A DNA stretch of 63,850 nt, filler included, from Octopus bimaculoides (taxonomy: Eukaryota), in assembly GCF_001194135.2 (NCBI RefSeq). It is 6 parts of 6 records of this genome, joined end to end, with 100 filler letters (N's around TTAATTAATTAA, not from the genome) between each part and the next. Parts side by side here need not be neighbours in the genome. Positions count along the whole stretch, not along the records: positions 28,846 to 37,809 come from NW_026423565.1; 5 more parts are not named here. One strand, given 5' to 3'. Made by a program: the position numbers and the translations under genes. The notes beneath the pieces are model-generated. The model was given only the letters and a program-made list of their open reading frames with translations, was not told the origin of the DNA and made no database searches. Shown in pieces: positions 4,951 through 37,809 of the stretch (positions within the stretch are counted from its first letter, which is position 1; each line of letters opens with the position of its first letter).

Positions 4951-5399
4951 AAAGTGGTATTTGAATTTAGAATTTGGGATAGAGGGATTGGCAGGAGTTC
5001 TGCTGTGTGAAAAGCTAATGATTCATTCTTGTGTTTATCAAGGTTTATCTAAGTTCCTCATTGTGTGCGATCATCTACATGATAAAACTATGAGACAGAA
5101 ATGCTTCAAGTCTTTTTTTTCACCTGAATGATCAAATATCATAAGAAATTTAGTGGTTTTCACTAAATAAACTCTACTATATTGTGTAGAGCCTCTTTTG
5201 TTTCTAATCCAAATAATGTGAATACATATATACACACACACATACACACACAATTTAAATAATATGAATACATGTGTACATACATACACACCCATTCTAT
5301 TGATAGATAAACAAGTGCATTTTTTCCTGACTCGGACTTGTAGACAACTTACACACACACACACACACACACGTGAGAGAGAGAATTGTGATGTCGTAG

Positions 5400-10284: not shown

Positions 10285-11262
10285 GTATAATGACTGAGTG
10301 GTTAGAGTGTCAGGCTCACAATCATGATGTATTAAGTTCAATTCCTAGGCTAGGCTGTGTGTTGTGTTCTTGAGTAAGACACTTTATTACATGCTGCTCC
10401 ACTTCACTCAGCTGTAGAAAACAATTGGGATCTATTTCAAAACGGGGGCACCAGTTTTCATTTATGTTTTATGTAGTGTTTTTGGTACCGAAAGACTTTC
10501 AAACTTCGTATACTTATCTATTTTGTGTTATAGAACAGAAAAATATTTTTGTATTCGAATTTATTTCATGTAAAAAATTGTCTTATTTCGATAATTTCTA
10601 CTAATCACTGACGTCTATTCAGTTGAAAACAGTTAGCGCTGTAACGGTGTATATCGTATTAATCCCCTAACCCTAACCCTAAAACTAACCCTAACTCTAG
10701 AATCCGAACTCTAAAATTGTTACACACATAGATACACACAGCGTAATTTATTATATAAACAATATATGCGTATAAATTACGATTAAACCGGATGAAATAT
10801 GTCACAGGGAATAACATTTTTATGACCGCCCAGCAGTAACTCTATTCAGCTGAATAGACATCAGTGATTGGTTGAAATTACAGAAATACGACAACTTTAA
10901 CATGGAATAACTTGCGATGTACGTTTTTTTTGTTAAGAAGACTAAGAGTAAAAGATGTTTTATATGACACATTCTACCAGTGTCCCAAGTTTCAAAGTGT
11001 TTCGTTAGTGTTTCGTTAAGAAAATACTGGTGCCCCCGTTTTGAAATAGATCCAAGAATTGCAATGTCACTGGTGCCAAACTGTATTGATTGGCCTTTGC
11101 CTTTCCTTTGTATAACATCGGTGGCATGGAGAAGGGAGGCTGGTATGTATGAGTGACTGCTGGTCTTCCATAAACACCCTTACTCAGACTTGTGCCTTGG
11201 AGGGGAACTTTCTTAGGTGCAATCCTATGGTCATTCATGACTAAAGGAGGTCTTTATCCTTA
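10285..11262 (+). mobile_element. tRNA-derived SINE interrupted by a MITE
   Basis: Box A TGACTGAGTGGTTAG and box B AGTTCAATTCC are present. The body resumes after 11061. Confidence 0.65.
10428..11053. mobile_element. MITE with perfect 28-bp TIRs and 8-bp TSD (Merlin-like)
   Basis: GGATCTATTTCAAAACGGGGGCACCAGT and its exact reverse complement bound the element. The flanks are AACAATTG and AAGAATTG. Internal (CCCTAA)n is present. Confidence 0.85.
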
Positions 11263-28845: not shown

Positions 28846-28887
28846 TTCGTTAAGAAAATACTGGTGCCCCCGTTTTGAAATAGATCC
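28846..28887. mobile_element. Right TIR end of a second Merlin-like MITE copy
   Basis: Identical to 11012-11053. Confidence 0.85.
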
Positions 28888-28888
28888 C

Positions 28889-29211
28889 TTATTCTATCAG
28901 TGTCTTTTGCCGAACTGCTAGATTACAGGGACATAAACACACCAACATCGGTNNNNNNNNNNTTTTGCCGAACTGCTAGATTACAGGGACATAAACACAC
29001 CAACATCGGTTGTCAAGCGATGGTGGAGAGACAAACACACCCACACAAGCATATACATACATGCTTCCTTCAGCTCCCATCTACCAAATCTGCTCAAAAG
29101 CTTTGGTCAGCCTGAGGCTACAGTAGAAGACACTTGCACAACATGCCATGCAGTGGGACTGAACAAAGAGCCATGTGGCCGGGAAGCAAGCTTCTTACCA
29201 CACAGCCACGC
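28889..29211 (-). mobile_element. Abundant SINE copy
   Basis: Homologous to 14526-14952. Confidence 0.85.
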
Positions 29212-29349
29212 TGTGTATATATATATACACACACATATATATATATACACACACACATATANNNNNNNNNNATATACACACACATATATATATATACACA
29301 CACACATATATATATATATATGAAATTTTTAATTAATCAACGGATATAC

Positions 29350-29448
29350 TAAGTATGTCTACCTGCTTGAAATAACAGTAAAAACTCATTAAATCGCCAA
29401 AAAATACAGTGAGTTTTGACTGTTATTTCAAGCAGGTAGACATACTTA
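29350..29448. repeat. Hairpin with 39-bp arms (1 mismatch) and 21-nt loop
   Basis: TAAGTATGTCTACCTGCTTGAAATAACAGTAAAAACTCA ... TGAGTTTTGACTGTTATTTCAAGCAGGTAGACATACTTA. Confidence 0.9.
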
Positions 29449-30624
29449 TTANNNNNNNNNNCTGTTATTTCAAGCAGGTAGACATACTTATTATGTCCTT
29501 TGATTAATTTTAATCCCATGGCTATTTAAATGCTATTTTTTGACCTGCTGTCGCCTGTATTGTTGATTCTGTTATTATCATTCTTAAATTAGTGACATTG
29601 GATNNNNNNNNNNNNNNNNNNNNNNNNNNNNNNNNNNNNNNNNNNNNNNNNNNNNNNNNNNNNNNNNNNNNNNNNNNNNNNNNNNNNNNNNNNNNNNNNN
29701 NNNNNNNNNNNNNNNNNNNNNNNNNNNNNNNNNNNNNGGTGTAGAAAACAAATAGATGTATTAGTATACCGCTCGGGAATTGAAAAAAGTCTTTAACGTT
29801 TCAAGTCTACGCTCTTCCACAGAAAGGAACACACAAAGAAACAAGGAGAGAGAAAAAAAATGTGTGTNNNNNNNNNNACAGAAAGGAACACACAAAGAAA
29901 CAAGGAGAGAGAAAAAAAATGTGTGTAGTGGTTAGCGATCTATAGCCAAGACTTTCGCTATGCTGTCTCTCTTCTTTCACCTCTTTGTGGGGTAATAATC
30001 TTCATCTTTAGTTACAGTTCCTCATTCAAACTATATAATACACAGNNNNNNNNNNNNNNNNNNNNNNNNNNNNNNNNNNNNNNNNNNNNNNNNNNNNNNN
30101 NNNNNNNNNNNNNNNNNNNNNNNNNNNNNNNNNCATGTAGAGGTCTGAACTTAATTTTCATTCACATATTTGCATTTCAAAAAGTTAACACAATCTTTTC
30201 CCTAAATCAACTATCGTAAAAATTTTCTACCATGACCTCACATTTTCTATGTNNNNNNNNNNATCGTAAAAATTTTCTACCATGACCTCACATTTTCTAT
30301 GTATGTGTGTGTGCCTTAAAAGATGTGATTAGACAGAGGTCCATTAAGAATACCTCTCAGAAACAGACTACGTATAAATTCTTTCTTCACAACTTCTGGA
30401 GCTATTTTCTGACAGTGGGGTGGGGTGGGGGCAGAAAAATTTCATACAACTGGAGGCTCCAATAGAAACAGGGGACCCGAAATAAGGCTGAAAAACGCTG
30501 TTATAGATTATGCCTAACCAAAAACAATCACAGCCACANNNNNNNNNNTATAGATTATGCCTAACCAAAAACAATCACAGCCACATCATCCAAACAGATC
30601 GAGTGAAACCAGACTTATCTGCTA

Positions 30625-30658
<34 letters not shown>

Positions 30659-30669
30659 NNNNNNNNNNA

Positions 30670-30700
<31 letters not shown>

Positions 30701-30704
<4 letters not shown>

Positions 30705-30889
30705 GAGTAGAACAGCTAGTTTTAAATCTCTGAATGAGATTTAAGTAGTAACTATACTGCATAGTTAAAAGGTAGTAACATGGTCCTGCACAGGACTGCC
30801 ACCTTATGTTAGCAAATCGATTTTACTATGCAGTATAGTTACTTCTTAGATCTCATTCAGAGATTTAAAACTAGCTGCTTTACTCATTA
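30701..30889. mobile_element. Fold-back MITE with ~65-bp inverted arms
   Basis: TAATGAGTAGAACAGCTAGTTTTAAATCTCTGAATGAGAT... and its reverse complement, with a few mismatches. Confidence 0.8.
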
Positions 30890-32996
30890 CAAGATCAGTG
30901 ACTCTCTGTCACTTCTATATTTATATACTGTAAGCATTTTTTTTCTCATCAATTAAAACCAGCTGAACGTCGTTACAGTACGTTTGATNNNNNNNNNNNN
31001 NNNNNNNNNNNNNNNNNNNNNNNNNNNNNNNNNNNNNNNNNNNNNNNNNNNNNNNNNNNNNNNNNNNNNNNNNNNNNNNNNNNNNNNNNNNNNNNNNNNN
31101 NNNTGGACTACATTTCCCAGTTCACGAGTGACATTCGGCATATACCTGGAACAAAGAACGTGCCTGCTGACGCAGTCTCTCGTCTCCCTGTATGTTCTCT
31201 TTCAACTCCTGCTGCAATCGATTTANNNNNNNNNNNNNNNNNNNNNNNNNNNNNNNNNNNNNNNNNNNNNNNNNNNNNNNNNNNNNNNNNNNNNNNNNNN
31301 NNNNNNNNNNCTATCTTCCACTTCCATCTGCTGACGGCACAATCCTTTGTGACACAGCTATTGGTTCTCCCAGACCGTTTGTTCCTGCGACCCACCAGCG
31401 TTCTGTTTCGATGCCTTGCATTCACTATCACATCCTGGCATTGCTGCCCAAGTGAAGCTTATTACGGCTCAGTTTTTCTGGCCTAATATGCGCCATATTA
31501 TCACCGCTTGGACACACGCTCTTGTGCGAAATGCCAGCGTTCTAAAGTCCACAGGCACATTCGTGCTCCTCTTGGATAGTTTTCTCCACCGGAGACTCGC
31601 TTTCGCCATGTCCACGTTGATCTGGTTGGACCATGGCCTGTCAGTCGCAGGTTCTCTTACATGTTGACATGCGTTGATCGTTTCTCTCGTTGACCTGAAG
31701 CCATTCCAATAGTGGACATTTCCGCTGAGTCAGTTGCTCNNNNNNNNNNNNNNNACTGGATTGCTCGCTTTGGTGTCCCAGCTAAAATAACCACTGATCG
31801 TGGATGACTGTTCGAAGCCTCCTTATTTCGTGAACTGTCACAAACACTAGGTGTTCATCATATTCGTATGACCAGCTACCATCCAGCTTCCAACGGGATG
31901 GTTGAACGTTTTCACAGGCAACTGAAGGCTGCTCTACGCGCCACTCCTGATCCACAGTCNNNNNNNNNNTCACAGGCAACTGAAGGCTGCTCTACGCGCC
32001 ACTCCTGATCCACAGTCTTAGACAGGAATTCCTGCCTATCGTTCTTCTTGATGGTCGCACTGCTACTAAGACAGACTTAGGTTTCTCCTCTGCTGAACTC
32101 CTTTACGGTACCATCCTGGCNNNNNNNNNNAGACTTAGGTTTCTCCTCTGCTGAACTCCTTTACGGTACCATCCTGGCACAATGTTTGGCATCAGACAAT
32201 TCATCACGTCCTGATTCAACGTCGTATGTCACCAGACTTCGCTTGTATTTCTCAAATCTTCCACCCATGCATCCGCGTGACCAATCTATTCCCTCTCACA
32301 TCCCACCAGACATTGACAAATGGACTCACGTTTTTGTTCGGGATGATTCTGTCAAGGGACCTCTCGTTTCTTCTTATAAGGGACCATTTTGTGTGCTATC
32401 ACGCACACCCAAAACTTTTAGTCTCGACATCAATGGTCGGGCAGAGACTGTGTCTGTCGACAGACTTAAAAGGGCACATTTTGAAGTGTCCGCACCCTTC
32501 GATGACACCCCAACCACGCCGACCTTTGATCCTTTACAACCACCTACACATGCACCTTTGACCACACCATCACCTCCACCTTCGTCGCCACTACCTAACA
32601 TGAACAAACCTTATGTCACNNNNNNNNNNCACCTCCACCTTCGTCGCCACTACCTAACATGAACAAACCTTATGTCACCAGGACAGACCGCACTGTGCAT
32701 TGGCCCAAACAAACTCACTAGAACTATTTACANNNNNNNNNNCAGACCGCACTGTGCATTGGCCCAAACAAACTCACTAGAACTATTTACATCTAACTTT
32801 TTTCCTTTTTCTTCCTGTGATAGACAATTGTTTTCTTGTAGACTGAACAATACCGATGCCTTGTCATTGAACTCTGTAAAATAATGTTTTGTNNNNNNNN
32901 NNNNNNNNNNNNNNNNNNNNNNNNNTTCTCAATTTCACATTTTGTATTATATTTTGTACCACATCTTGTTGTTTGCTTTCTTGTACATGCTCCAGT

Positions 32997-35043
32997 TATA
33001 GAAAAGTTGGTTATACACCATTAGGTGTACACCTGCTTTCCTATATTAAATTCTGAATAAACAGAACGCAGAACTCCGAACTATCAACACAACGATATTT
33101 ATTTATGTAGGAAAATAGACATCTTTAATCTTGGTTGTTGAGACGCCTTCTGTGAGAGAACATGGTTGCTGAGACGTTGGAATGTTGATGTGAGCTGTCC
33201 CCAGAGTTGANNNNNNNNNNNNNNNNNNNNNNNNNNNNNNNNNNNNNNNNNNNNNNNNNNNNNNNNNNNNNNNNNNNNNNNNNNNNNNNNNNNNNNNNNN
33301 NNNNNNNNNNNNNNNNNNNNNNNNNNNNNNNNNNNNNNNNNNNNNNNNNNNNNNNNNNNNNNNNNNNNNNGCTCCCCTTGCCAGTGCGGAACGCACGAAA
33401 ATAGAAAATTGGAGGAACGCTTGAGGCAGGATGGCCACTGAAAACCACCCACAAAGAAAATCAAAGAAATGAATGTACACTTGTGAGATACATGCATGCN
33501 NNNNNNNNNNNNNNNNNNNNNNNNNNNNNNNNAAGTAATATGGGCAGTAAATGCCACCTAGTGAAAAACAAATGAGACAATGTTAAAACAATCGTGATGA
33601 CCACTGTCCAGGAACTGATATCACGAGATGTAAAAGTCTGATTGTTTGTTTTTTTTCTGAAAGGAAAGAAAATGTATGAGTGCACAAGTGTGTGTGTGAG
33701 NNNNNNNNNNNNNNNNNNNNNNNNNNNNNNNNNNNNNNNNNNNNNNNNNNNNNNNNNNNNNNNNNNNNNNNNNNNNNNNNNNNNNNNNNNNNNNNNNTTA
33801 TAGCATGTCCATACGCAGGAAGTTGTGGTCAAAGGAGCAGAGCTGTATTTGAGCGTCGGATGCTGGGACTTGTGTTACCTGGTACGGAATATCCTATAAA
33901 AGTTACACNNNNNNNNNNNNNNNNNNNNNNNNNNNNNNNNNNNNNNNNNNNNNNNNNNNNNNNNNNNNNNNNNNNNNNNNNNNNNNNNNNNNNNNNNNNN
34001 NNNNNNNNNNNNNNNNNNNNNNNNNNNNNNNNNNNNNNNNNNNNNNNNNCTGGAAAATGCTGTCATGAATTCGGAGCTGCGAGCGAAAATGACCAAAGAA
34101 TCCCGATGCAAATAAAGATAAGCCAATAACTCTTCCATTCTCCGGCCGAGAGAAACGGAGAGGTGTGAAATATGCTNNNNNNNNNNNNNNNNNNNNNNNN
34201 NNNNNNNNNNNNNNNNNNNNNNNNNNNNNNNNNNNNNNNNNNNNNNNNNNNNNNNNNNNNNNNNNNNNNNNNNNNNNNNNNNNNNNNNNNNNNNNNNNNN
34301 NNNNNNNNNNNNNNNNNNNNNNNNNNNNNNNNNNNNNNNNNNNNNNNNNNNNNNNNNNNNNNNNNNNNNNNNNNNNNNNNNNNNNNNNNNNNNNNNNNNN
34401 NNNNNNNNNNNNNNNNNNNNNNNNNNNNNNNNNNNNNNNNNNNNNNNNNNNNNNNNNNNNNNNNNNNNNNNNNNNNNNNNNNNNNNNNNNNNNNNNNNNN
34501 NNNNNNNNNNNNNNNNNNNNNNNNNNNNNNNNNNNNNNNNNNNNNNNNNNNNNNTGTTGTTGTAGCTCAGCGGGCTGCGTGTTTGAATCACGTCGGGGTC
34601 ACCAATTATAGGAATAGTGGTTATGTGAACTTTTCAAATTGGCTGCGTGTTTGAATCACGTCGGGGTCACCACTTTTTAGGAAAGTGGTTATACACCATT
34701 AGGTGTACACCTGCTTTCCTATNNNNNNNNNNTGGTTATACACCATTAGGTGTACACCTGCTTTCCTATATTAAATTAGGAAATAACGGAACGCAGAACT
34801 CCGAACTATCAACACAACAATATTTATTTATGGTNNNNNNNNNNNNNNNNNNNNNNNNNNNNNNNNNNNNNNNNNNNNNNNNNNNNNNNNNNNNNNNNNN
34901 NNNNNNNNNNNNNNNNNNNNNNNNNNNNNNNNNNNTGTTGATGTGAGCTGTCCCCAGAGTTGGAATGATGGAGAGACAGCTTGACGCGTCCATACTCATA
35001 GCGCACGAGACTACGCATGCGCACGAGACACGGCGTTACTACA
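32997..35043 (-). mobile_element. Non-autonomous LTR retroelement (~2 kb) nested in the Gypsy 3' UTR
   Basis: A 4-bp TSD CAGT sits at 32993-32996 and 35044-35047. Two homologous LTRs of ~370 bp (32997-~33370 and ~34676-35043) are present, with a PPT AAGGGGAGC at ~33371-33379 on minus and a PBS beside the 5' LTR. Confidence 0.85.
34573..34672 (-). promoter_or_regulatory. Tandemly duplicated tRNA-Trp primer-binding site, 32 nt each
   Basis: The plus strand carries GGCTGCGTGTTTGAATCACGTCGGGGTCACCA twice (34573-34604 and 34641-34672). This is the 3' end of eukaryotic tRNA-Trp including CCA. Confidence 0.85.
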
Positions 35044-36048
35044 CAGTCATTCTAATTTTTACACTGGTGTTCTCGGGGGAGGGGAGCTCCTGTAGCGTGA
35101 CACAAGAAGCCAGTGCCATTTTATACGAGATCTCGCCGGCGGCCATTGCTAGGTTCGAGAAAAGAGCGAAATCTTGCCTACAACCATGTTTGCCATGCGC
35201 GTGACCACAGTGAGGCTCTCGTGGGCAACATCTATTTAAGGAGGTGTATTGAACAATCCCACTCTCTTCTCTCGCGTTGGCGTTCACATTGAACAACACT
35301 GCAACCTAGCAGCTCACAGCGGGTTCTTAACCCGCTCTAACTTTACCCGTTATCTGCAGAGGTAATGTACCTCTCACGAACGGAGCTAATGAACTACGTA
35401 CTGACATACAGATGGTCGCCGGGAGCAAACCCCATGAAATGAGAACCAATTAAACAACCATTGAATTGCATCCACTTGTAAACCTCTTCTTCTTCTTCAA
35501 TTTCCAGAATCCTAAGACTACAGAAAATAATTGTAATGGGAGAAGGAGATACTTCACAGGTATCAGTAACCTTCTAGTCCCATTATAGACAGTTCGACAG
35601 GAGCTGACCAGGCAGAAGACTGCACCAGACTTCTGTTTGTTTTGGCATTGTTTTTATGGCTGGATGCCCTTTAAAAAAAGTGTTATTAATATGAAAAAAT
35701 TGTGAATCAAATGTTTTAATGTTCACAAGAATATGTAAGTAGATTTAAAAGTTGTTGGTCACCATATTTGTCTCTGATTGATCATTGTTCTGAAGAACAT
35801 ACCCACAAAACACACACACATACATGCAAGGAGGATAGAGGAATAACCCAGCTTCGAATTTTTTTACACATTCTTTATAATAACCACTATCTGCATATTT
35901 TAATAATACATTGACAGTCTTTCTCTTTCTCTCTCTCTTTGTTCTCCCTTTCCTTCCCTCTCTCTCTTTCTCTCCCTTTCCCTTCATCCCCCATCTTTCC
36001 CCACTCTCCCTGTCTACTGCCCGAATACAAATAATTGATTTATAAGCA

Positions 36049-37809
36049 CTAGCAGAATCACCGCCCTCCAGGTGGTCGATTCAACTAGTAAATATCTGAA
36101 CTCCTGTTTGTAGTTTGAAAGTAAAATGTGAAACTTACTACAATTTTCTTAAAGAATTTNNNNNNNNNNTAGTTTGAAAGTAAAATGTGAAACTTACTAC
36201 AATTTTCTTAAAGAATTTCCTTATTGACAATGTTGCCAGTGTAGATTCCTTTCATATCCTTATACCCTGAATCCAAAGCCAATATTATATGCACATTGTT
36301 CCCAGAACCAAAGCCAATACATGCACATTATTCCCAGAAACAAAGCCAATATATGCCCATTGATCCTAGAACTTTGGATTGGTTGTCATAGTGATGAAGT
36401 AGTCTGGTTTTCCAAACTCTCTCACCAAANNNNNNNNNNGGTTGTCATAGTGATGAAGTAGTCTGGTTTTCCAAACTCTCTCACCAAAGCCATTCCAGCT
36501 TGGAAACACTCCCTGTAAAACCAAGAACCAATATGTGATGGCAGAAGAATGATTTTAGACCCTATGTCATTCATGTCACCATTTGCAATAGCATCCAGAA
36601 GGCCCTGGTACTTTTCAGNNNNNNNNNNTTCATGTCACCATTTGCAATAGCATCCAGAAGGCCCTGGTACTTTTCAGCCTTAACCTGTTTCTGATGAATT
36701 CTAAGGAAGTGTAATCGATCTTGCTCTATCTTTGCATATTGATCTACTGCATATTGTTNNNNNNNNNNCTTTGCATATTGATCTACTGCATATTGTTGCA
36801 TCAGACGTCTACTTTTCACTATGCCATTGAACTCGTCCTTTCTTACCTGAACCGATAAGAACAAAAGTCACATTCAGTGATATTTTTACTTCGGTCATTG
36901 TCTTTCAAGAGCACATTCCAGCCATCTTCCCCGTAGGTAAACAGAAATACATAATGAAGACGGTCATAGCTTTGACTAATGTAGTCTAACTTCCCATTGC
37001 TCTCTCTGTACTGCACAACAGCATCCGCAGGTTTAATGTTTGGATTATTGGTATCATCTCCCACCATGATCACAGCANNNNNNNNNNAATGTTTGGATTA
37101 TTGGTATCATCTCCCACCATGATCACAGCAACTTCTGCTGCAGTCAGTGGATTATAGGTTCTCTCATGTGTCCCAGCAGGAATCAGCTGTTTGTCATGAC
37201 TTATAATATTATCACTGGTAGAACATTTTCCTGGTGCAGAGTATTCTTTAATTATATTAGTAGCCTGTTTAAAACTTTTGACATATGGATTATGCATATG
37301 CAGTGCTCTTTACAAGTCTAGCAGGATGTCCTCATTAAGGTCATTGTCAGCTTCTCTGAAATGACAACCTGTTTCTCATCTCATTTTCAGTATCAATGAA
37401 ATATAACTATGCGTAGACTGGCTTCCTATTTACTGCTGGTAGGAGACTTTCTATGCAGTTGTACAACTTTCATTGAATCTTGAAAGTGCTACCATAAAAA
37501 AGCATAAAAGCGCTACCACCTTGTGGTCCAGCTGGTGGATTATCCAGTCCAAGTGAAGCCATAGCCAGTAAATTATTGTAGNNNNNNNNNNNNNNNNNNN
37601 NNNNNNNNNNNNNNNNNNNNNNNNNNNNNNNNNNNNNNNNNNNNNNNNNNNNNNNNNNNNNTTTTTTTTTTTTTATCTGTGGAACTTTGTCATTGCTAAT
37701 TTTTCCTTTGCCACAGCAGGGGGTAGTTTTCTCAGAACTCTAAAGGTAAGCTATGCAGCCAGGGCATGTTCTGTTAAAAATGTTTCCACAGTAGTGCAAC
37801 ATAAGGCTT
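36049..37809 (-). mobile_element. Internally deleted Helitron (Rep N-terminal region fused to the helicase C-terminus, 3' hairpin plus CTAG)
   Basis: HNPYVKSFK, AAEVAVIMVG, RLMQQYAVDQYAKIE and GKPDYFITMTTNPK are followed by YTGNIVNKEIL*. A degenerate hairpin then CTAG|T lies at 36049. Confidence 0.85.

What the first reader, a model, noticed from the sequence alone, without database searches (positions are those of the whole stretch)
34573..34695. Tandem, over-long tRNA-Trp primer-binding sites (2 x 32 nt, 68-bp period)
Seen: two exact copies of the last 32 nt of tRNA-Trp including CCA (about G45-A76, both with TTC>TTT in the T loop). Each is preceded on the minus strand by a copy of the last ~20 nt of the LTR, and no N gap separates them. 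Known: PBSs are normally 18 nt or shorter because RT stops at m1A58. Inference: read-through of the primer into the variable loop was fixed and then duplicated. This could give two priming sites, stronger primer capture or a decoy for 3' tRNA fragments, and may represent an expandable tRNA-fragment array.
Basis: partly seen in the sequence, partly recalled or inferred. Interest (0 to 1): 0.8.

Follow-up and report, generated by a model that had tools for sequence, protein, structure and literature searches.

The report
Doubled over-long tRNA-Trp primer site
A small, non-coding jumping gene (LTR retrotransposon) in an octopus genome carries two identical 32-base docking sites for tRNA-Trp where one 18-base site is normal. 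This is an unusual variant of a well-known feature, and the doubling rests on one tiny contig of a fragmented assembly.

Summary
The 32-mers at 34573-34604 and 34641-34672 are identical. Read on the minus strand, they are the complement of tRNA-Trp(CCA) G45-A73 plus CCA, matching 31/32 against tRNA-Trp genes fetched here. Both share one mismatch, C56>T.

They sit 2 nt downstream of the 5' LTR of a ~2 kb, non-coding, minus-strand LTR retrotransposon (32997-35043). It has a perfect 4-bp target duplication (CAGT) and is nested in a broken Ty3/Gypsy element of an Octopus genome. An O. sinensis paralog shows the uninterrupted site.

Over-long tRNA-Trp sites are not unique. Nine unrelated metagenome contigs carry CCA-bearing copies of 29-50 nt. 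Two more end exactly at G45. One (L036) has the same "LTR-end + site" reiteration.

The second unit is not a plain tandem duplicate. Its 18-nt LTR end differs from the adjacent LTR, and a 16-nt unrelated filler separates the units. That fits reverse-transcriptase template switching, or recombination, between two family members.

Function (two priming sites, decoy) is untested. No other family copy with a primer site could be retrieved, and the doubling lies on one 168-bp contig. Verdict: a real PBS, a new variant of a known kind, moderately interesting.

The parts
34641..34672 (-). LTR-proximal primer-binding site, 32 nt, complementary to tRNA-Trp G45-A73 plus CCA
   Evidence: Exact 32-mer. 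First 18 nt equal the Rfam RSV_PBS consensus PBS. 31/32 to tRNA-Trp gene variant A; mismatch at PBS nt 21.
34673..34674 (-). 2-nt spacer between the 5' LTR end and the proximal PBS
   Evidence: LTR end defined by the solo LTR in L125 (TGTAG...CTATA with TSD AACG) and by the A/C LTR alignment.
34675..35043 (-). 5' LTR of the nested element. It is interrupted by an N10 gap with a duplicated 37-nt contig overlap (34723-34732) and an N101 gap (34835-34935).
   Evidence: 94% identical to the 3' LTR over 49 and 100 nt, and 27/27 further on. Starts TGTAG directly after the TSD. A U5 hairpin is predicted just 5' of the PBS, z=-2.8.
34625..34640 (-). 16-nt filler between the two units (minus strand AATTTGAAAAGTTCAC). 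It has no counterpart after the distal PBS or in the LTR.
   Evidence: Direct reading.
34605..34624 (-). Second copy of the LTR end (18 nt, 34607-34624) plus the 2-nt spacer (34605-34606). It diverges from the adjacent LTR end.
   Evidence: 14/20 ungapped identity to 34673-34692; all 6 differences of the 52-nt unit lie here. 18/23 to the 3' LTR end.
34573..34604 (-). Distal primer-binding site, identical 32 nt
34555..34572 (-). Leader after the distal PBS, cut by an N378 gap. tRNA similarity stops here (no match to tRNA nt 44 and upstream).
   Evidence: The Rfam tRNA model gives only 12.2 bits against a gathering score of 29.
33211..34554 (-). Internal region of the nested element: four short sequence islands between N gaps, plus the unsequenced start of the 3' LTR. 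No coding similarity.
   Evidence: Six-frame translations and tblastx against Gypsy loci found nothing. N-run map.
32997..33210 (-). 3' LTR of the nested element (the sequenced part; it continues into the N gap)
   Evidence: Aligns to the 5' LTR pieces at 94-100%. Ends ...CTATA next to the TSD.
32993..32996 (.). Target-site duplication CAGT, left copy
   Evidence: O. sinensis paralog L002 has GCTC-CAGT-CATTC uninterrupted at 10687.
35044..35047 (.). Target-site duplication CAGT, right copy
30935..35587 (+). Host element: a 5'-truncated, degenerate Ty3/Gypsy remnant comprising the RNase H end, integrase, 3' region and LTR. It is split by the nested element. The integrase frame is broken by at least three frameshifts and at least two in-frame stops, plus the one insertion.
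   Evidence: The integrase C-terminal ORF is 78-84% identical to Octopus proteins. tblastx to L097/L036 pol. 35044-35587 is 71% identical to L002 10691-11221, directly downstream of the homologous gene.

Best explanation
The finding is the 5' LTR/leader junction of a small (~2 kb in scaffold coordinates), non-coding and therefore non-autonomous LTR retrotransposon. It lies on the minus strand and is inserted, with a 4-bp target duplication, into the 3' part of a dead Ty3/Gypsy element in an Octopus genome.

Its primer-binding site pairs with the last 32 nt of mature tRNA-Trp, not the usual 18. The extra 14 nt cover the T loop, the 5' strand of the T stem and the variable loop up to G45.

Inferred: the extra 14 nt are a heritable copy of the primer itself. 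It would have been made when plus-strand strong-stop synthesis ran past position 58 and the product was retained. It would since have been transmitted through the element's own RNA. That would explain why a mutation at PBS nt 21 (tRNA C56), outside the 18 nt recopied from the primer in each cycle, persists in both units.

Inferred, with lower confidence: the second unit (18 nt of LTR end, 2-nt spacer, 32-nt PBS) behind a 16-nt filler is a reverse-transcription error. Minus-strand synthesis on one RNA ran through its PBS into the U5 hairpin. It then switched to a second, slightly different co-packaged family RNA 16 nt downstream of that RNA's PBS.

Both sites could anneal tRNA-Trp. Whether both are used is not shown.
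For: Shown:
- The PBS is exact and non-random.
- It matches the tRNA-Trp 3' end at 31/32 including CCA, which genes do not encode.
- It sits 2 nt from an LTR end.
- The two LTRs are in direct orientation at 94-100% identity over the aligned parts.
- There is a perfect CAGT duplication, with the uninterrupted site in L002.
- A solo LTR of the same family in O. bimaculoides (L125 792-1198) has TSD AACG and fixes the termini as TGTAG...CTATA.
- The internal islands show no coding similarity.

Comparators:
- Nine metagenome contigs have CCA-bearing tRNA-Trp complements of 29, 29, 31, 32, 32, 37, 39, 49 and 50 nt.
- L097 and L036 are Ty3/Gypsy elements with a DUF7041 gag, RT, RNase H and integrase. 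L042 has a retroviral-type protease.
- L036 carries an array: LTR, PBS14*, PBS35*, an 18-nt LTR-end-like piece, a perfect PBS32, 12 nt, a perfect PBS14, then gag.
- The endpoints at nt 27/28 lie just before G26, which by established knowledge is a hard RT block when it is m2,2G.

Hybrid origin: all 6 differences between the units fall in the LTR-end part (P=0.0019). A stable hairpin is predicted in the last ~45 nt of U5.

Octopus relatives of the host family also use tRNA-Trp, with single short sites (L001 6441, L128 6097).

Literature: m1A58 is the plus-strand stop, and read-through products are non-complementary (PMC8599865). The PBS lies 2-4 nt after the LTR (PMC7472051).
Against: - The tandem arrangement rests on one 168-bp contig in an assembly full of unmerged overlaps and gaps.
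- No second family copy with a PBS was recovered, so neither the 32-nt length nor the doubling is shown to be a family trait.
- The octopus tRNA-Trp gene was not available. If it carried T56, the 'inherited mutation' argument would fail.
- How a non-complementary read-through tail becomes fixed is inferred, not shown.
- The metagenome search pattern required PBS nt 4-28, so it could only find long sites and says nothing about their frequency.
- L026, the 50-nt case, sits next to a NADAR-domain ORF and may not be a retroelement.
- A DNA-level rearrangement, such as a truncated second insertion or recombination between copies, would give the same structure as a template switch.
Confidence: 0.6

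Rival explanations
1. The doubling is an assembly artefact. Two family members, each with one 32-nt PBS but different LTR ends and leaders, were threaded into one short contig through the shared 32-mer.
For: The island is only 168 bp, between N378 and N10. Every N10 gap in the piece is flanked by duplicated contig ends, so the assembler's handling of repeats is poor. The two LTR ends look like different family members.
Against: The junctions TGGTTAT|GTGAAC and CAAATT|GGCTGC are unique sequence on both sides of the filler. A graph assembler cannot invent them without reads that contain them. The only sequence shared at the first junction is about 8 nt. An independent assembly (L036) shows the same LTR-end plus PBS reiteration.
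Confidence: 0.2
2. The long and doubled site is an adaptation. Thirty-two base pairs capture the primer more firmly by taking up the T arm, which the canonical pairing frees. A second site adds a second chance to prime, or soaks up inhibitory 3' tRNA fragments. The nt-21 mismatch spoils the seed of a 22-nt fragment without touching the 18-nt priming duplex.
For: There are zero differences in 2 x 32 nt against 6 in the adjacent 20 nt. The same G45 endpoint occurs in three unrelated elements. An array is kept in front of a gag-pol element in L036. [quoted passage not shown] PBS nt 21 pairs with tRNA nt 56, which is nt 2 of a 22-nt 3' fragment (arithmetic).
Against: There is only one copy and no population or expression data. 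The element is non-coding, and the other family copies recovered are LTRs without a PBS. In L036 the upstream units are decayed, which argues against constraint on every unit. Identity of the two PBS is equally explained by a recent hybrid origin.
Confidence: 0.15
3. The sequences are not primer sites but remnants of a tRNA-Trp retro-pseudogene or tRNA-derived SINE on the plus strand. Alternatively, the repeat is a plus-strand LTR preceded by a polypurine tract.
For: On the plus strand the tRNA reads in sense with CCA. A weak purine run (AGGAAAG) precedes TGGTTAT. The host integrase is on the plus strand just upstream of the first LTR copy.
Against: ARAGORN finds no tRNA, and the Rfam tRNA model gives 12.2 bits against a gathering score of 29. 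Only nt 45-76 are present. The uninterrupted site in L002 shows that the LTR pair is an insertion into the host, not the host's own LTR. In plus orientation the 3' LTR would be preceded by CGGGGTCACCA, which is not a purine tract. In minus orientation a perfect PBS follows the 5' LTR by 2 nt. The solo LTR in L125 ends before the purine run's complement, exactly at CTATA plus the TSD.
Confidence: 0.03

Closest known systems
Canonical tRNA-Trp primer-binding site of avian sarcoma/leukosis viruses (Rfam RF00467 RSV_PBS)
   Same: The first 18 nt are identical to the model's PBS. It has the same primer species and the same position just after U5.
   Different: Here the complementarity is contiguous for 32 nt, not 18. 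The flanking U5-leader structure of the Rfam family is absent (16.5 and 15.2 bits against a gathering score of 47). In RSV the T arm of the primer is contacted by a separate U5 segment (my own knowledge), not by a longer PBS.
CsRn1-like Ty3/Gypsy elements of trematodes and insects
   Same: tRNA-Trp PBS and 4-bp target duplication, as stated in PMC2582038.
   Different: That clade is defined by its Gag (CHCC motif) and pol. The nested element has no coding sequence, so this cannot be tested. The coding comparators found here (L097, L036) and the octopus L128 copy have a DUF7041-type gag (faint hit in L128). No over-long or doubled PBS is mentioned in the passages read.
Extended primer-template contacts in Ty1, Ty3 and HIV-1
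   Same: These also use more of the primer than the 3' 18 nt. HIV-1 pairs the first 22 nt of tRNA-Lys3, and complementarity is conserved up to nt 55 (PMC7472051, PMC8599865). Ty1 has an 'extended PBS' (PMC3681743, title list).
   Different: In those cases the extra contacts are short or discontinuous boxes. Here it is one uninterrupted 32-nt complement that includes the T loop and variable loop, and up to 49-50 nt in other contigs.
Retroviral vectors engineered with two primer-binding sites (my own knowledge: MLV- and HIV-1-based dual-PBS studies from about 2003-2004)
   Same: Two PBS in tandem in one leader.
   Different: Those are laboratory constructs. This is a natural genomic copy whose second unit brings its own LTR end. 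None of those papers was retrieved in the library searched.
Non-autonomous LTR retrotransposons (TRIM / LARD type)
   Same: LTRs, PBS and target duplication, with no gag-pol.
   Different: LTRs of ~300-400 bp and up to ~1.4 kb of internal sequence (by gap estimates) exceed the usual TRIM size and fall short of LARDs. The polypurine tract cannot be seen because it lies in an N gap.
PBS array of metagenome contig L036 (Ga0131853_10026270)
   Same: LTR, PBS-like unit(s), an LTR-end-like piece, a perfect 32-nt tRNA-Trp PBS ending at G45, and a further partial PBS.
   Different: It is an autonomous Ty3/Gypsy from an unknown host. Its upstream units are decayed and of unequal length, and there is no 16-nt filler of the kind seen here.

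Membership tests
LTR-retrotransposon primer-binding site | Complementary to the 3' end of a host tRNA including the non-encoded CCA | tested here: met
   31/32 to tRNA-Trp nt 45-73 plus CCA. 18/18 to the Rfam RSV_PBS consensus PBS.
LTR-retrotransposon primer-binding site | Lies within a few nt of the 3' end of the 5' LTR, on the element's sense strand | tested here: met
   2-nt spacer after an LTR end defined independently by the solo LTR in L125. PMC7472051 gives 2-4 nt.
LTR retrotransposon (complete insertion) | Two direct LTRs and a target-site duplication, with the uninterrupted site in a paralog | tested here: met
   LTR pieces are 94-100% identical. CAGT/CAGT duplication. L002 has GCTCCAGTCATTC uninterrupted, and L003 also lacks the insertion.
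LTR retrotransposon (complete insertion) | Polypurine tract directly upstream of the 3' LTR | tested here: inconclusive
   The junction lies in the N gap 33211-33370. A purine run AAGGGGAG borders the gap at 33371-33382 on the minus strand.
Autonomous Ty3/Gypsy element | gag and pol (protease, RT, RNase H, integrase) between the LTRs | tested here: not met
   The internal islands have no coding similarity. About half of the interior is N, so small remnants cannot be excluded.
CsRn1-like Gypsy clade | tRNA-Trp PBS and 4-bp TSD | tested here: met
   Criteria taken from PMC2582038.
CsRn1-like Gypsy clade | Gag with CHCC motif; pol phylogeny | not testable with these tools
   The nested element has no coding sequence.
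TRIM (terminal-repeat retrotransposon in miniature) | Very short LTRs (about 100-250 bp) and an internal region of a few hundred bp | tested here: not met
   The LTR is ~300 bp here and 407 bp in L125. The interior is up to ~1.4 kb by scaffold coordinates. The size limits are from my own knowledge.
tRNA gene or pseudogene / tRNA-derived SINE | Cloverleaf, or at least the 5' half with internal promoter boxes | tested here: not met
   ARAGORN finds none. The Rfam tRNA model gives 12.2 bits against a gathering score of 29. Similarity stops at G45.
Rfam RF00467 RSV_PBS | Score at or above the gathering threshold, including the U5-leader stem | tested here: not met
   16.5 and 15.2 bits against 47. 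Only the PBS itself aligns.

The most novel reading that the evidence does not exclude
A set of invertebrate tRNA-Trp-primed Ty3/Gypsy-type elements, found here in octopus and in hosts behind several metagenome contigs, habitually copies its primer far past position 58. The copy runs to the variable loop (G45) or to just before G26, and the elements inherit it. Their genomes would then be a natural record of where reverse transcriptase stops on a mature tRNA in vivo. LTR-end plus PBS units can be reiterated into small arrays. The octopus family's shared nt-21 mismatch would sit at seed position 2 of a 22-nt 3' tRNA fragment. That would let a long site keep priming while escaping fragment-guided silencing.
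Probability: 0.15. Interest if true: 0.7.

Novelty: new variant of a known kind. Interest (0 to 1): 0.45.

Why it matters
Retroviruses and LTR retrotransposons are taught to carry an 18-nt primer-binding site because the methylated A58 of the primer stops plus-strand strong-stop synthesis. The in vivo weight of that stop was still called questionable in 2021 (PMC8599865).

Genomic copies that carry 29-50 contiguous nt of a mature, CCA-tailed tRNA-Trp are fossils of events in which the stop was passed and the product survived. Their endpoints (G45 three times, nt 27/28 twice) point to the next obstacles on the tRNA.

The doubled unit adds a natural example of a leader with two primer sites. It also shows template switching at the U5/PBS border, which until now I know only from engineered vectors.

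None of this changes what a PBS is. It widens the known range of its length and copy number, and gives a simple sequence signature to search for in other genomes.

Tried and rejected
1. Plus-strand reading (polypurine tract plus LTR belonging to the plus-strand integrase). I took this seriously because the integrase ends ~330 bp upstream of the first LTR copy. It was rejected by the uninterrupted site in L002/L003, the CAGT duplication and the L125 solo LTR.

2. tRNA gene, pseudogene or SINE: rejected.

3. Scan of viral contigs for the tRNA-Trp core: 0 hits.

4. Partial PBS repeats after the long PBS as a general 'footprint'. Only L036 (14 and 12 nt, 0/300 shuffles) and L119 (10 nt, 2/300) are significant. 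L097, L122, L022, L026 and L042 are not. I dropped the general claim, and with it the microhomology model as anything more than an idea.

5. Long PBS in octopus host-family copies L001 and L128: alignment beyond 12-16 nt is not better than shuffles (164/2000 and 808/2000).

6. Coding remnants in the internal islands: none.

7. More family copies. All twelve octopus loci (about 245 kb; all 12 look-ups used) gave two LTR copies without a PBS (L125, L128) and no 5' LTR-PBS copy. No eukaryotic genome can be searched by DNA with these tools.

8. Octopus tRNA-Trp gene: not present in eleven of these loci (only a tRNA-Arg in L125); L132 was not scanned.

9. Literature. Four searches for over-long or doubled natural PBS and tRNA read-through found nothing specific. 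The assembler's k-mer size for the octopus assembly was not found.

10. L026, the 50-nt case, turned out to lie next to a NADAR-domain ORF, so it is not counted as a retroelement.
Full report
WHAT IS IN THE SEQUENCE

The piece (28846-37809) is a very fragmented short-read scaffold. It has 31 N runs. Every 10-N gap is flanked by an exact 37-49 nt duplicate of the contig end. These are unmerged overlaps, not biology.

The finding lies on a 168-bp island, 34555-34722. That island overlaps the next contig by 37 nt across an N10 gap (34686-34722 = 34733-34769).

Within the island the 32-mer GGCTGCGTGTTTGAATCACGTCGGGGTCACCA occurs twice, at 34573-34604 and 34641-34672. There is no other copy at up to 3 mismatches and none in shuffles.

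IDENTITY OF THE 32-MER

On the minus strand the first 18 nt equal the PBS in the consensus of Rfam RSV_PBS. Otherwise the family is not matched (16.5 bits against a gathering score of 47).

To obtain a comparator beyond 18 nt, I scanned metagenome contigs with a 25-nt degenerate core and got 120 loci. About 115 of them are ordinary eukaryotic tRNA-Trp(CCA) genes. Four 72-nt variants account for 71 loci.

The window's 32-mer is G45-A73 of the variant with C47/G57, plus CCA, at 31/32. The one mismatch is C56>T, in both copies. No hit had T there, although the pattern allowed it. tRNA similarity stops at G45 on both copies. ARAGORN and the Rfam tRNA model see no tRNA.

WHICH ELEMENT, WHICH STRAND

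The integrase-like ORF at 32186-32617 is 78-84% identical to 'uncharacterized' proteins of Octopus bimaculoides and O. sinensis. I fetched twelve octopus loci around such proteins.

In O. sinensis L002 the sequence GCTC-CAGT-CATTC is continuous at 10687. In the window, GCTC-CAGT (ending at 32996) and CAGT-CATTC (starting at 35044) are 2 kb apart. L003 also lacks the intervening DNA.

So 32997-35043 is an insertion with a perfect 4-bp target duplication. Its two ends are direct repeats. 32997-33210 aligns to 34675-34722, 34733-34834 and 34936-34962 at 94%, 94% and 100%.

A solo LTR of the same family in O. bimaculoides (L125 792-1198, 78-88% identity) is flanked by AACG/AACG. It fixes the termini as 5'-TGTAG...CTATA-3' on the window's minus strand. 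A further copy without a PBS is in L128.

With these termini, the proximal 32-mer starts 2 nt after the 5' LTR, which is where a PBS belongs (PMC7472051). The four internal sequence islands show no coding similarity. The element is therefore non-autonomous, with the caveat that about half of its interior is N.

The host is a 5'-truncated Ty3/Gypsy remnant on the plus strand. Its integrase frame has at least three frameshifts and at least two in-frame stops. Its 3' region continues at 35044-35587.

Octopus relatives of the host family also start their leader with a tRNA-Trp site, but a single short one (L001 6441, L128 6097).

ANATOMY OF THE DOUBLING (minus strand, 5' to 3')

- 5' LTR
- AG (spacer)
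- PBS32
- AATTTGAAAAGTTCAC (16 nt)
- ATAACCACTATTCCTATA (18 nt of an LTR end)
- AT (spacer)
- PBS32
- CGCTGAGCTACAACAACA
- N gap

The two 52-nt units match at 46/52, and all six differences are in the LTR-end/spacer part (P=0.0019). The 16-nt filler has no counterpart after the distal PBS.

So this is not a head-to-tail 68-bp duplication. It is the leader of one family member joined to the U5 end, PBS and leader of another.

An RNA fold of the region puts a stable hairpin in the last ~45 nt of U5, immediately before the PBS (z=-2.8). The retained 18 nt are its 3' arm.

COMPARATORS

Nine of the 120 metagenome loci are not tRNA genes. They are CCA-bearing antisense copies of the tRNA-Trp 3' part with non-tRNA flanks:

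- 29 nt: L119, L122
- 31 nt: L022
- 32 nt: L036, L097
- 37 nt: L106
- 39 nt: L061
- 49 nt: L042
- 50 nt: L026

L097 is a compact Ty3/Gypsy with an LTR pair, a DUF7041 gag, RT, RNase H and integrase. L036 is similar. L042 has a retroviral-type protease. L026 sits near a NADAR ORF and is left unclassified.

Three independent elements (window, L036, L097) end at G45, and two end at nt 27/28.

L036 has an array (oriented coordinates): LTR end at 5272, decayed PBS units at 5274-5287 and 5288-5322, an 18-nt piece resembling the LTR end, a perfect PBS32 at 5341-5372, 12 nt, and a perfect PBS14 at 5385-5398, followed by gag. L119 has an extra 10-nt PBS piece (2/300 shuffles). The other loci show nothing significant.

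The scan could only find sites of 28 nt or more, so it shows recurrence, not frequency.

HOW IT MOST LIKELY WORKS

Shown: this is a PBS for tRNA-Trp in the correct place of a bona fide LTR insertion. It is 32 nt long and present twice on the contig.

Established knowledge: the plus-strand strong-stop DNA copies the primer up to m1A58, and a product that runs further no longer matches the minus strand (PMC8599865).

Inference 1. Contiguous, CCA-tailed complements of 29-50 nt are copies of the mature primer. They are not gradually evolved complementarity. The endpoints before G26 fit the known block at m2,2G26. The G45 endpoint coincides with the start of the 26:44 pair and the anticodon stem.

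Inference 2. Once fixed, the extension is transmitted through the element's RNA. This explains a mutation at nt 21 that primer recopying of the first 18 nt does not erase. It also explains why both units carry it.

Inference 3 (weaker). The second unit arose by template switching between two co-packaged, slightly different family RNAs at the U5 hairpin. A DNA-level rearrangement between two copies would look the same.

Function of the second site is unknown. A 32-bp duplex would use T-arm nucleotides that the canonical pairing already frees. That resembles in effect, but not in form, the U5-TΨC contact of avian retroviruses (my own knowledge).

RELIABILITY OF THE DOUBLING

The junctions on both sides of the filler are unique sequence, and only about 8 nt are shared at the left one. 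A graph assembler could not have produced them without reads that contain them. L036 shows the same design in an unrelated assembly.

Even so, one 168-bp contig in a repeat family is thin support. I put the chance of an artefact at about 0.2.

COMPARISON AND NOVELTY

tRNA-Trp priming with a 4-bp target duplication is known for CsRn1-like Gypsy elements (PMC2582038). Longer or additional primer contacts are known for HIV-1 and Ty1.

I found no description of contiguous sites of 29 nt or more, or of natural U5-end plus PBS reiteration. However, the four searches were narrow and much of the older retrovirus literature is not in the library.

I file the finding as a new variant of a known kind. 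Interest is moderate (0.45). It would rise if a census showed that the 32-nt, T56, doubled form is a family trait, or that the endpoint spectrum is general.

Noticed in passing
window 28846-37809, e.g. 28905-28952/28963-29010, 32571-32619/32630-32678, 36111-36159/36170-36218, 34686-34722/34733-34769: Every 10-N gap is flanked by an exact 37-49 nt duplicate of the contig end. These unmerged overlaps create spurious '58-59 bp period' repeats and shift reading frames.
   Followed up: yes
window 36366-37300, minus strand: Helitron remnant. The ORF at 36422-36571 matches Pfam Helitron_like_N (E=8.5e-7, 29.8 bits against a cut-off of 28.9). Neighbouring ORFs gave no hit.
   Followed up: partly
window 30935-32996 and 35044-35587, plus strand: Host Ty3/Gypsy remnant. 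It is 5'-truncated. The integrase is broken by at least three frameshifts and at least two in-frame stops, and the 3' region is split by the nested element. Related octopus copies carry a single short tRNA-Trp PBS right after their LTR (L001 6441, L128 6097).
   Followed up: partly
window 29331-29378/29462-29509, 29347-29388/29410-29451 and 30701-30769/30821-30889: Long, near-perfect inverted repeats (93-95% complementary) that look like small hairpin-forming (MITE-like) elements. The first pair straddles an N10 gap, so it may be partly an overlap artefact.
   Followed up: no
window 36286-36381: Three tandem copies of a 32-nt unit (91% and 66% identity to the first) next to the Helitron remnant.
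   Followed up: no
window 33371-33382, minus strand: The purine run AAGGGGAG borders the N gap that hides the start of the 3' LTR. It could be the polypurine tract of the nested element, but this cannot be tested.
   Followed up: no
L036 (Ga0131853_10026270), oriented 5272-5398 = locus 5079-5205: A Ty3/Gypsy element with four tRNA-Trp PBS-like units of 14, 35, 32 and 14 nt between the LTR and gag. One unit is preceded by a copy of the LTR end. The upstream units are decayed and the downstream ones perfect.
   Followed up: partly
L026 (JAAUYA010329291.1), oriented 351-400: A perfect 50-nt antisense copy of tRNA-Trp nt 27-73 plus CCA lies ~480 nt upstream of an ORF with a NADAR domain. It is not an obvious retroelement.
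   Followed up: partly
L035 (Ga0126328_10001127) 151-175: The 3' part of tRNA-Trp without CCA and with a T run after it, but non-tRNA sequence upstream. It looks like a truncated tRNA pseudogene rather than a PBS.
   Followed up: no
L125 13242-13314: A tRNA-Arg(ACG) gene, the only tRNA found in the 11 of 12 fetched octopus loci that were scanned. No tRNA-Trp gene was available for direct comparison.
   Followed up: no
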